Origin: Macrostomum lignano
Taxonomy: Eukaryota
Direction: 5' to 3'
DNA length: 64,000 nt
NCBI GenBank assembly: GCA_002269645.1
Contig: NIVC01000889.1
Span: 310,001 to 374,000 of the forward strand
In this document: piece after piece, positions 92-539 of the stretch
How positions within the stretch are numbered: position 1 is the stretch's first letter
How the letters are laid out: every line of letters begins with the position of its first letter
The notes under the pieces: model-generated
Told to the model about the DNA's origin: nothing
The model's database searches: none
What the model saw: only the letters and a program-made list of their open reading frames with translations
Made by a program: the position numbers and the translations under genes

Positions 92-161
92 CCAAGGTTG
101 GCTACCAATTGTTGTCAACCAATTAAGGCACACTGACATTCCCTGCTTGCAAAAATTCCAG

Positions 162-539
162 TCTCAATTAACAGCTTCATCATCAGCTGCCGGCTTCGAC
201 ATTGAAGTCGCAGCCGATGCAGGCGCAGAAATTCCAGTTCGCCTACTGGATGACCTGTGCAGCCGGTTCATTGTTAACCTGCCCAGTCACTACTTCACTA
301 ATGCTGTGAAACTGTTCTACGAGATTGAGCACGCCTATTGGTTCTATTTGGACAATCTGGTTGCTGAGCACAGTCTGAAGCCGATGAATATGTATCGATT
401 CTCTGCTCTGGTGTTCCAGCACTGCAGCAAATTGGCCAGCTACACTTACACCTGGCAGGCTCATTATGACGAATGGCGCAAGACCAAAGCTGAGACGCCA
501 ACCTGCGGCGCCGCCTTAATGAACTCAGATTTGGATCAG
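162..539 (+). CDS. DCP2: DCP2 exon 1 (regulatory Box A domain and start of Nudix domain); initiator Met not encoded in window
   Basis: IPVRLLDDLCSRFIVNLP...EIEHAYWFYLD matches DCP2 Box A. Acceptor TTCCAG| at 161 with CTGAC branch-like motif at 133-137. Donor CAG|GTGTGA at 540, phase 0. Confidence 0.93.

What the first reader, a model, noticed from the sequence alone, without database searches (positions are those of the whole stretch)
131..260. DCP2 has no start codon of its own: candidate spliced-leader-donated AUG
Seen: no ATG occurs anywhere in 1-146, nor in frame before Box A (the first in-frame ATG is inside the domain, KPMNM). The first AG after a CTGAC branch motif (133-137) is at 160-161 and is exactly phase 0, so an added AUG gives M-SQLTASSSAAG...IPVRLLDDLCSRF with a normal short N-terminus. 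Known: flatworm spliced leaders end in AUG that can serve as the initiator Met. Inference: DCP2 is obligatorily trans-spliced, and a decapping enzyme would then be made from a TMG-capped mRNA. Candidate acceptors at 7506 (CLASRP) and 59113 (BCL11) are also in frame with their ORFs, but I selected those by eye.
Basis: partly seen in the sequence, partly recalled or inferred. Interest (0 to 1): 0.7.

Follow-up and report, generated by a model that had tools for sequence, protein, structure and literature searches.

The report
Flatworm DCP2 lacking its own ATG
The mRNA-decapping gene DCP2 of the flatworm Macrostomum lignano has no start codon of its own ahead of its conserved domain; it most likely borrows the AUG at the end of the trans-spliced leader, a mechanism already known in flatworms, but I could reach no transcript to prove it.

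Summary
Window 1-216 has no ATG. The DCP2 frame is closed by TAG stops at 75, 81 and 87. The first in-frame ATG is at 384. Fifteen residues that are invariant or nearly so in 119 DCP2 orthologs lie upstream of that ATG, including the cap-binding Trp and Asp (S. pombe W43/D47). A start codon must therefore come from elsewhere.

The window is Macrostomum lignano. Its single 35-nt spliced leader (SL) ends in ATG, and 45% of its conserved genes are SL trans-spliced. Of the six AGs between the stop at 87 and the conserved IP codons, only 160-161 is in phase 0. It sits in TTCCAG, matching the published SL-acceptor motif [T/C]TNCAG, 25 nt after a CTGAC branch-like site. An SL-donated Met gives a 24-residue N-terminal extension (ortholog median 12, 95th percentile 21), so no further exon is needed.

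I could reach no transcript and no sequence upstream of the window, so an ATG-bearing cis exon upstream is not excluded. A minor rival is a one-base indel hiding an ATG at 217.

The mechanism is known (Cheng et al. 2006), so this is a probable new instance, not a new kind. CLASRP and the BCL11-like gene have their own ATGs.

The parts
75..89 (+). Three in-frame TAG stops (75, 81, 87) inside a short TTAGGG-like stretch. They close the DCP2 frame upstream.
   Evidence: stops in the frame of 162; TTAGGG at 74 and 86
133..137 (+). CTGAC, a branch-point-like motif (yUnAy). Its A is 25 nt upstream of the AG at 160-161, with no AG in between.
   Evidence: The motif match is read from the sequence; branch-point use is inferred.
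141..150 (+). Pyrimidine-rich stretch ccctgcttgc (8 of 10 pyrimidines) between the branch-like motif and the acceptor.
   Evidence: read from the sequence
156..161 (+). TTCCAG, the candidate 3' splice acceptor. It matches the M. lignano SL-acceptor motif [T/C]TNCAG, and the AG at 160-161 puts base 162 in phase 0.
   Evidence: motif from PMC8629364
162..539 (+). DCP2 coding exon 1 (126 codons): a non-conserved N-terminal extension (162-233), then Box A. It ends at a GT donor (540-541) in phase 0.
217..219 (+). First ATG in the window. It is out of frame (+1) and opens a 30-codon dead-end ORF (MQAQKFQFAYW...ML*). One extra base in the A-run 229-231 would put it in frame, giving MQAQKIPVRLLDDLCSRF.
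243..482 (+). Dcp2 Box A domain (Pfam PF05026, E 8e-21). It includes codons for the gatekeeper Trp (W61) and Asp (D65), which align with S. pombe W43 and D47.
   Evidence: residue roles from PMC8984151
384..392 (+). First in-frame ATGs (384 and 390, M-N-M). This is where the public M. lignano protein model P0001 begins. It lies inside Box A, downstream of W61 and D65.
540..1074 (+). The only intron within the coding sequence (GT...CAG). Most of it is a 30-bp tandem repeat (643-1038).
   Evidence: ungapped alignment across the junction
1075..2223 (+). DCP2 coding exon 2: Nudix domain, Box B, a low-complexity C-terminal tail, and the stop TAG at 2221-2223.
1120..1200 (+). Nudix box with unusual spacing, GX5EX11REVLEETGF. 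It has 11 residues between the Glu and the Arg-Glu; 118 of 119 orthologs have 7.

Best explanation
Window 131-260 is the 5' end of the coding region of the Macrostomum lignano DCP2 gene, which encodes the catalytic subunit of the mRNA-decapping enzyme.

Proposed mechanism: the pre-mRNA is SL trans-spliced at the TTCCAG acceptor (AG at 160-161). The 35-nt spliced leader CGGTCTCTTACTGCGAAGACTCAATTTATTGCATG is joined directly to base 162. Its terminal AUG then serves as the initiator codon, giving M-SQLTASSSAAGFDIEVAADAGAE-IPVRLLDDLCSRF..., a 509-residue DCP2.

Without trans-splicing, a scanning ribosome would first meet the out-of-frame AUG at 217, which opens a 30-codon dead-end ORF. The first in-frame AUG at 384 would give a protein lacking the first 47 of the 80 Pfam-matched Box A residues, including the cap-binding Trp and Asp.

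Shown: the absence of an own start codon, conservation of the upstream coding sequence, the phase and motif of the acceptor, the species, and its SL sequence.
Inferred: that this acceptor is used in trans rather than in cis, that the SL AUG initiates translation, and that the mRNA carries the SL's trimethylguanosine (TMG) cap.
For: 1. The species is M. lignano. The public model P0001 is 100% identical over the part of exon 1 it covers, and otherwise identical apart from one mis-modelled, frame-shifted stretch and one substitution.
2. M. lignano has one SL, which ends in ATG. 30% of all its genes and 45.3% of its genes conserved with human are SL trans-spliced. The top SL-acceptor motif is [T/C]TNCAG, right at the junction (PMC8629364). 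Window 156-161 is TTCCAG.
3. Of the six AGs between the in-frame stop at 87 and the conserved IP codons, only 160-161 is in phase 0.
4. There is no in-frame ATG before 384, yet residues I25 to D65, invariant or nearly so in 119 orthologs, are encoded upstream of it. They include W61 and D65, which align with S. pombe W43 and D47, the cap-sandwiching residues (PMC8984151).
5. With the SL Met, the extension before the conserved IP is 24 residues. In orthologs the median is 12, the 95th percentile is 21, and only 2 of 119 have 24 or more. A further coding exon is therefore not needed and would make the N-terminus more atypical.
6. Use of the flatworm SL 3'-AUG as initiator is established. [quoted passage not shown] 2006, as cited in PMC9851317 and PMC12582326). 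A paper on Macrostomum genomes notes that the SL's final ATG is a likely translation start codon (PMC10468722).
7. The independent public gene model starts at Met 384, so its gene prediction found no upstream ATG exon either. This is weak evidence.
Against: - I saw no SL-joined transcript. No M. lignano transcript or protein covering the N-terminus is in the reachable collections, and DCP2 is not in the supplements I searched.
- The window begins only 161 nt upstream of the acceptor, so a cis donor further upstream cannot be ruled out.
- Cis acceptors in this species share the CAG consensus, so the motif discriminates poorly between cis and trans use.
- A phase-0 YTNCAG in the permissive interval is expected about 0.11 times by chance.
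- The complete lack of ATG in 1-216 would also fit a 5' UTR kept free of upstream AUGs.
- The 24-residue extension is already at the long end for DCP2.
Confidence: 0.65

Rival explanations
1. Ordinary cis-splicing. A short first coding exon lying upstream of the window start carries the ATG and a few codons, and is spliced in phase 0 to the acceptor at 160-161. Window 1-161 is then the 3' end of an intron.
For: The acceptor, the branch-like motif and the pyrimidine stretch would serve a cis intron equally well. Only 161 nt of upstream sequence is visible. M. lignano genes average about 5 introns (PMC5730564). Cis acceptors share the CAG consensus.
Against: It would lengthen an N-terminal extension already at the 98th percentile of 119 orthologs. 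A cis intron could be in any phase, whereas the SL AUG requires phase 0, which is what is seen. This gene is otherwise intron-poor, with one intron in 1.5 kb of coding sequence. The public model P0001 found no such exon. TTCCAG fits the SL-acceptor motif exactly.
Confidence: 0.22
2. The gene has its own ATG at 217, put out of frame by a one-base deletion between 220 and 231. This is either an assembly error or a real frameshift in this copy. The true N-terminus would be MQAQKIPVRLLDDLCSRF, and 1-216 would be 5' UTR or promoter.
For: Adding one base to the A-run 229-231 gives a canonical short DCP2 N-terminus, with 5 residues before IP against a commonest value of 7 in orthologs. The absence of ATG in 1-216 would fit a 5' UTR free of upstream AUGs. 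The assembly lineage is PacBio-based.
Against: The DCP2 frame stays open for 47 codons upstream of 231, about 0.1 by chance (my estimate, (61/64)^47). A phase-0 consensus acceptor sits within that stretch (about 0.11 by chance). An out-of-frame ATG somewhere in 162-231 is expected about half the time anyway (my estimate). If the window is from the published Mlig_3_7 assembly, which I did not establish, that assembly was polished with Illumina DNA and RNA-seq reads. The independent model P0001 also fails to use this ATG.
Confidence: 0.05
3. Translation starts inside the visible exon without any donated AUG, either at Met 384 (giving a truncated protein, as in the public model) or at a near-cognate codon in 90-161 such as ATT 108, ATT 138 or TTG 147.
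For: The public annotation P0001 starts at 384. In-frame near-cognate codons exist.
Against: Starting at 384 removes 47 of the 80 Pfam-matched Box A residues, including the conserved LDDLCSRF and the gatekeeper Trp and Asp. These are nevertheless perfectly conserved in the DNA, which implies they are translated. Before reaching 384, a scanning ribosome would meet the out-of-frame AUGs at 217, 250 and 301. Nothing supports the near-cognate sites.
Confidence: 0.04
4. This copy is a 5'-truncated, non-functional duplicate of DCP2 in the highly duplicated M. lignano genome.
For: M. lignano is a hidden polyploid with many duplicated genes. A TTAGGG-like stretch lies just upstream.
Against: The 509-codon ORF is intact across both exons with a clean GT-AG intron, and every residue that is invariant across the 119 orthologs is kept. 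The truncation point would have to coincide with a phase-0 consensus acceptor.
Confidence: 0.03

Closest known systems
[quoted passage not shown]
   Same: A flatworm SL ending in AUG; an acceptor in phase 0 with the ORF; the recipient gene has no AUG of its own ahead of conserved coding sequence; the conserved protein is complete only with the donated Met.
   Different: A different flatworm order (free-living Macrostomorpha) and a different gene. Here neither the SL junction nor translation from the SL AUG was observed; in Schistosoma they rest on cDNAs and functional tests.
slORFs: ORFs created by start codons inside spliced leaders in nematodes, Oikopleura and trypanosomes (slORFfinder, PMC9851317)
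   Same: The spliced leader supplies the start codon, and annotation pipelines that ignore the SL miss or truncate the ORF.
   Different: Those cases mostly use near-cognate NUG codons inside the SL and often create alternative or overlapping ORFs. Here a true AUG at the very 3' end of the SL would start the main conserved ORF.
Canonical metazoan and fungal DCP2 (Nudix decapping enzyme; S. pombe Dcp2 structures 5j3t, 5n2v, 2qkm)
   Same: Box A (PF05026) and Nudix (PF00293) domains, Box B, the gatekeeper Trp and Asp, and the catalytic REVLEE glutamates are all present. The alignment to S. pombe Dcp2 residues 10-233 has E 3e-44.
   Different: There is no own ATG. There is a 4-residue insertion in the Nudix box (X11 instead of X7 between E and RE). 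The C-terminal tail is long and of low complexity.
Ordinary SL trans-spliced genes of M. lignano (30% of genes; PMC8629364)
   Same: An acceptor of the [T/C]TNCAG type, and a conserved housekeeping gene, the class enriched for trans-splicing.
   Different: A gene of this class can carry its own ATG downstream of the acceptor. CLASRP and the BCL11-like gene in this window show that arrangement with their own ATGs, though their trans-splicing was not shown. DCP2 would depend on the SL for its start codon.

Membership tests
Flatworm mRNAs initiated at the spliced-leader AUG | The organism performs SL trans-splicing with an SL whose last three bases are AUG | tested here: met
   The window is identified as M. 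lignano. Its SL is CGGTCTCTTACTGCGAAGACTCAATTTATTGCATG (PMC8629364). No SL RNA gene lies in the window itself.
Flatworm mRNAs initiated at the spliced-leader AUG | A 3' splice acceptor placed so that the SL AUG is in frame (phase 0) with the main ORF, with no stop in between | tested here: met
   The AG at 160-161 puts base 162 in phase 0, and the frame is open from 90 to 539. It is the only phase-0 AG between the in-frame stop at 87 and the conserved IP codons.
Flatworm mRNAs initiated at the spliced-leader AUG | The recipient gene has no in-frame AUG of its own upstream of conserved, necessarily translated sequence | tested here: met
   There is no ATG in 1-216. The first in-frame ATG is at 384, and nine invariant and six near-invariant ortholog residues are encoded upstream of it.
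Flatworm mRNAs initiated at the spliced-leader AUG | The acceptor resembles the species' SL-acceptor consensus | tested here: met
   TTCCAG at 156-161 matches [T/C]TNCAG. This discriminates poorly from cis acceptors.
Flatworm mRNAs initiated at the spliced-leader AUG | Mature transcripts carry the SL joined at that acceptor | not testable with these tools
   No M. lignano transcript or N-terminal protein is in the reachable collections.
Flatworm mRNAs initiated at the spliced-leader AUG | No cis donor or ATG-bearing exon upstream (the upstream sequence is an outron, not an intron) | not testable with these tools
   The window starts 161 nt upstream of the acceptor. No homologous locus could be fetched: the CLASRP search found no Macrostomum protein to anchor one.
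Flatworm mRNAs initiated at the spliced-leader AUG | Translation actually starts at the SL AUG | not testable with these tools
   This needs an N-terminal peptide, ribosome profiling or a reporter assay.
DCP2 / Nudix mRNA-decapping enzyme | Box A domain followed by a Nudix domain and Box B | tested here: met
   Pfam PF05026 (E 8e-21) and PF00293 (E 5e-10). Box B FFLVIPF is conserved. S. pombe Dcp2 structures align at E 3e-44.
DCP2 / Nudix mRNA-decapping enzyme | Cap-binding gatekeeper Trp and Asp in the N-terminal domain, and catalytic Glu residues in the Nudix helix | tested here: met
   W61 and D65 align with S. pombe W43 and D47. R161, E162, E165 and E166 are invariant.
DCP2 / Nudix mRNA-decapping enzyme | Canonical Nudix box spacing GX5EX7REUXEEXGU | tested here: not met
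   The spacing is GX5EX11RE. 118 of 119 orthologs have X7 and one has X9. All motif residues are present, so I still file the gene as DCP2 and note the variant.

The most novel reading that the evidence does not exclude
Supply of full-length DCP2 in M. lignano depends strictly on SL trans-splicing. The level of the decapping enzyme would then be coupled to SL RNA availability and to how well a TMG-capped message is translated and decapped. That would allow a feedback loop between the decapping machinery and the trans-spliced (TMG-capped) part of the transcriptome, which is enriched in stem-cell genes.
Probability: 0.08. Interest if true: 0.5.

Novelty: new member of a known kind. Interest (0 to 1): 0.25.

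Why it matters
The main value is for annotation. Pipelines that trim the SL, ATG included, or that insist on a genomic ATG will truncate such genes. The public M. lignano DCP2 model starts at Met 384 and so lacks the first 47 of the 80 Pfam-matched Box A residues, including the cap-binding Trp and Asp. A functional inference from that model would be wrong.

If confirmed, this is a clean, easily tested example in a transgenic-capable flatworm of an essential conserved gene whose start codon lives on a separate RNA. It does not open a new mechanism. SL-donated initiator AUGs have been known in flatworms since 2006, and a trans-spliced DCP2 is not surprising when 45% of conserved genes in this species are trans-spliced.

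Tried and rejected
Attempts to reach transcripts or upstream sequence (all failed):
- Looked up the public M. lignano DCP2 fragment P0001 to fetch its contig and upstream sequence: not on record.
- Searched the protein collection with exon 1 alone plus a leading Met, looking for transcript-derived N-termini: only P0001 came back.
- Used the last protein search on the neighbouring CLASRP gene, to anchor a homologous M. lignano contig reaching upstream of the window: no Macrostomum protein found.
- Looked up the spliced full-length protein and the Met-384 version: the tool turned both away, and I did not pursue this by other means. The contiguous exon-2 ORF is allowed but is not on record.
- Scanned metagenome contigs for the first 39 bases of the exon: no hits.
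- Searched supplements of three M. lignano genome and transcriptome papers for DCP2: nothing.
- Searched the window for an SL RNA gene and for Rfam families: nothing.

Readings considered and rejected:
- The ATG-free stretch 1-216 as evidence in itself: too weak in this repeat-rich window.
- Start at Met 384 or at a near-cognate codon: conservation upstream argues against it.

Full report
**What is there**

Window 1-2223 holds a two-exon DCP2 gene on the + strand. Exon 1 runs from 162 (or earlier) to 539. The intron is 540-1074 (GT...CAG) and is filled with a 30-bp tandem repeat. Exon 2 is 1075-2223 and ends in TAG.

The conceptual product has a Dcp2 Box A domain (PF05026, E 8e-21) and a Nudix domain (PF00293, E 5e-10). 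It aligns without gaps across the exon junction to S. pombe Dcp2 structures (E 3e-44).

**Species**

The best database hit is a 190-residue UniRef protein of Macrostomum lignano, P0001. It is 100% identical over the part of exon 1 it covers. Elsewhere it is identical except for one frame-shifted stretch and one substitution. The next hits are arthropod and other animal DCP2 at about 44% identity. The window is therefore M. lignano, a free-living flatworm. The heavy tandem-repeat content fits that genome.

**Checking the observation**

- There is no ATG in 1-216.
- The ATGs at 217, 250 and 301 are in frame +1.
- The first in-frame ATGs are at 384 and 390.
- The DCP2 frame is closed upstream by TAG at 75, 81 and 87.
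- Between the stop at 87 and the conserved IP codons there are six AGs, at 95-96, 126-127, 160-161, 173-174, 185-186 and 236-237. Only 160-161 puts the following base in phase 0.
- CTGAC at 133-137 is followed by a pyrimidine-rich stretch, and the next AG is 160-161.

**Why a start codon must come from elsewhere**

I aligned the product with 119 orthologs. Residues D32, L33, R36, F37, P42, E57, W61, Y63 and D65 are invariant, and I25, P26, L30, D31, C34 and S35 are at least 90% conserved (numbering with an added Met). All are present in the window's ORF, and all lie upstream of the first in-frame Met.

W61 and D65 align with S. pombe W43 and D47. These are the gatekeeper residues that sandwich the cap in the active enzyme (PMC8984151). 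A protein starting at 384, as the public model P0001 does, would lack them. Sequence this well conserved is translated, so the reading frame is entered upstream of 234. It cannot be entered from within the visible exon by an AUG.

**Why the spliced leader is the best candidate**

- M. lignano has a single 35-nt SL, CGGTCTCTTACTGCGAAGACTCAATTTATTGCATG. It is attached to 30% of all genes and to 45.3% of genes conserved with human.
- The top motif at SL acceptors is [T/C]TNCAG, right at the junction (PMC8629364). Window 156-161 is TTCCAG.
- Joining the SL to base 162 gives ...UUGCAUG|UCU CAA..., that is M-SQLTASSS..., with a purine (G) at -3.
- The resulting extension ahead of the conserved IP is 24 residues. 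Orthologs have a median of 12 and a 95th percentile of 21, and 2 of 119 have 24 or more. No further coding exon is needed, and one would make the N-terminus still more atypical.
- Use of the flatworm SL AUG as initiator is established in Schistosoma mansoni. [quoted passage not shown] 2006, as cited in PMC9851317 and PMC12582326).
- The paper on the M. cliftonense and M. hystrix genomes explicitly notes that the Macrostomum SL's final ATG is a likely translation start codon (PMC10468722).

**How strong is this?**

Not decisive.

- The ATG-free stretch is only mildly unusual (2.5% of shuffles), and long ATG-free gaps are common in this repeat-rich window.
- A phase-0 YTNCAG in the 145-nt permissive interval is expected about 0.11 times by chance.
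- Cis acceptors share the CAG core.
- Above all, I could not see a transcript or any sequence upstream of the window. P0001 and the exon-2 ORF are not on record. No other M. lignano DCP2 or CLASRP protein is in the collection. A metagenome scan and three papers' supplements gave nothing.

**Rivals**

(a) *An ATG-bearing cis exon upstream of the window.* This cannot be excluded. It is disfavoured by the already long N-terminus, by the phase-0 coincidence, by the intron-poor structure of the gene, and weakly by the public model's failure to find such an exon. I give it about 0.22.

(b) *A hidden native ATG.* One extra base in the A-run 229-231 would put the ATG at 217 in frame and give MQAQKIPVRLLDDLCSRF, a very ordinary DCP2 N-terminus. 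Under that reading, however, two things would be coincidences: the 47 open codons upstream of 231 (about 0.1 by my estimate) and the in-phase consensus acceptor (about 0.11). The published Mlig_3_7 assembly was also polished with Illumina DNA and RNA reads, though I did not establish which assembly the window comes from. I give it about 0.05.

(c) *Initiation at Met 384 or at a near-cognate codon,* and (d) *a truncated dead copy.* Each is about 0.03-0.04, for the reasons given in the rival entries.

My rough weighing puts the SL-AUG reading at about 0.65.

**Consequences if the SL reading is right**

An un-trans-spliced transcript would be unproductive. The first AUG met by scanning is 217, which opens a 30-codon dead-end ORF. 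Full-length DCP2 would therefore depend on trans-splicing.

That the mRNA would carry a TMG cap is inferred from nematodes and schistosomes and was not tested for M. lignano. It would hold equally for the other trans-spliced genes, so the contrast 'a decapping enzyme made from a TMG-capped mRNA' is a curiosity rather than a paradox.

- CLASRP (+ strand) has its own ATG at 7510. Its product MWVEARRQEKQIRTSMVDYRKRAQRRREYY matches the human CLASRP N-terminus as I recall it (MWHEARKHERKLRGMMVDYKKRAERRREYY, from memory). The AG at 7505-7506 is in frame and would merely add M-T.
- The BCL11-like gene is on the minus strand. Its own ATG is at 59034-59032 (MASRRKQDRPTQL...). The AG at 59114-59113 is in phase and would add 26 residues.

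Neither gene needs the SL AUG. DCP2 is the only one of the three that does.

**Verdict**

- The mechanism is already known in flatworms, so this is a probable new member of a known kind.
- Its practical value is as an annotation warning and as an easily testable example.

Noticed in passing
window 1120-1200: The DCP2 Nudix box has 11 residues between the conserved Glu and the Arg-Glu (GKINDREAKAKFYPQAAAREVLEETGF). 118 of 119 orthologs have the canonical 7 and one has 9. This is a 4-residue insertion in the loop before the catalytic helix, and it is also present in the public M. lignano model P0001.
   Followed up: partly
window 1248-1330, compared with protein P0001: The public M. lignano DCP2 model P0001 reads ALLSTRRANGFQIQTGNSKR where the window encodes VGSALSRLYLVPDVPMDFKFKPETRNE. 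P0001's stretch is the +1 frame of the same DNA. The window's version keeps the invariant residues R191, L192, Y193, F204, P206, T208, R209 and E211, so the public model looks frame-shifted here as well as 5'-truncated.
   Followed up: partly
window 71-92: A short telomere-like stretch, GGATTAGGGTTAGGTTTAGGG (TTAGGG at 74 and 86), lies just upstream of the DCP2 acceptor. Its TAG triplets are the three in-frame stops.
   Followed up: no
window 153-162 and 229-238: The 10-mer AAATTCCAGT occurs twice in the window, and only at these two places: once at the candidate acceptor, and once inside the exon across the conserved E-I-P-V codons. The second copy is also a YTNCAG site (232-237), but an SL joined there would be out of frame.
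   Followed up: partly
window 7505-7608, 8957-9055, 9224-9334 (+): A CLASRP (CLK4-associating SR protein) gene lies 5.3 kb downstream of DCP2 on the same strand, with its own ATG at 7510. About 3.7 kb of the intergenic space is tandem repeat (2397-3999, 4452-5349, 5960-7177), leaving about 1.6 kb. That is above the 1-kb repeat-adjusted operon threshold used for this species, so an operon is not indicated.
   Followed up: partly
window 59114-58900 (minus strand): The first coding exon of a BCL11-like gene lies on the minus strand, with its own ATG at 59034-59032 (MASRRKQDRPTQLNSDSE...). A GC-rich region on the minus strand at 44.5-45.3 kb holds a 251-codon open frame that may be an off-frame reading of zinc-finger codons of the same gene; I did not test this.
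   Followed up: partly
window 7630-8916, 9497-11172, 2397-3999, 5960-7177, 18.5-20.7 kb: There are very large tandem arrays inside introns and intergenic DNA: (TAGA)x322 in CLASRP intron 1, a 25/50-bp array of about 1.6 kb, a 42-bp array of about 1.6 kb, and a 23-bp array of 53 copies. A long (SVMSDSVISQ)n-type open frame follows a CLASRP exon at 18485.
   Followed up: no
window 1844-1913: A perfect 30-bp tandem duplication (2.3 copies) lies inside the DCP2 coding sequence and encodes repeated AASSNAAAAT in the low-complexity C-terminal tail.
   Followed up: no
window 63803-63986 (minus-strand sense): A dense cluster of CCCTAA hexamers, about 14 at irregular 9-23 nt spacing, lies at the 3' end of the window. 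It is telomere-repeat-like sequence interspersed with other bases.
   Followed up: no
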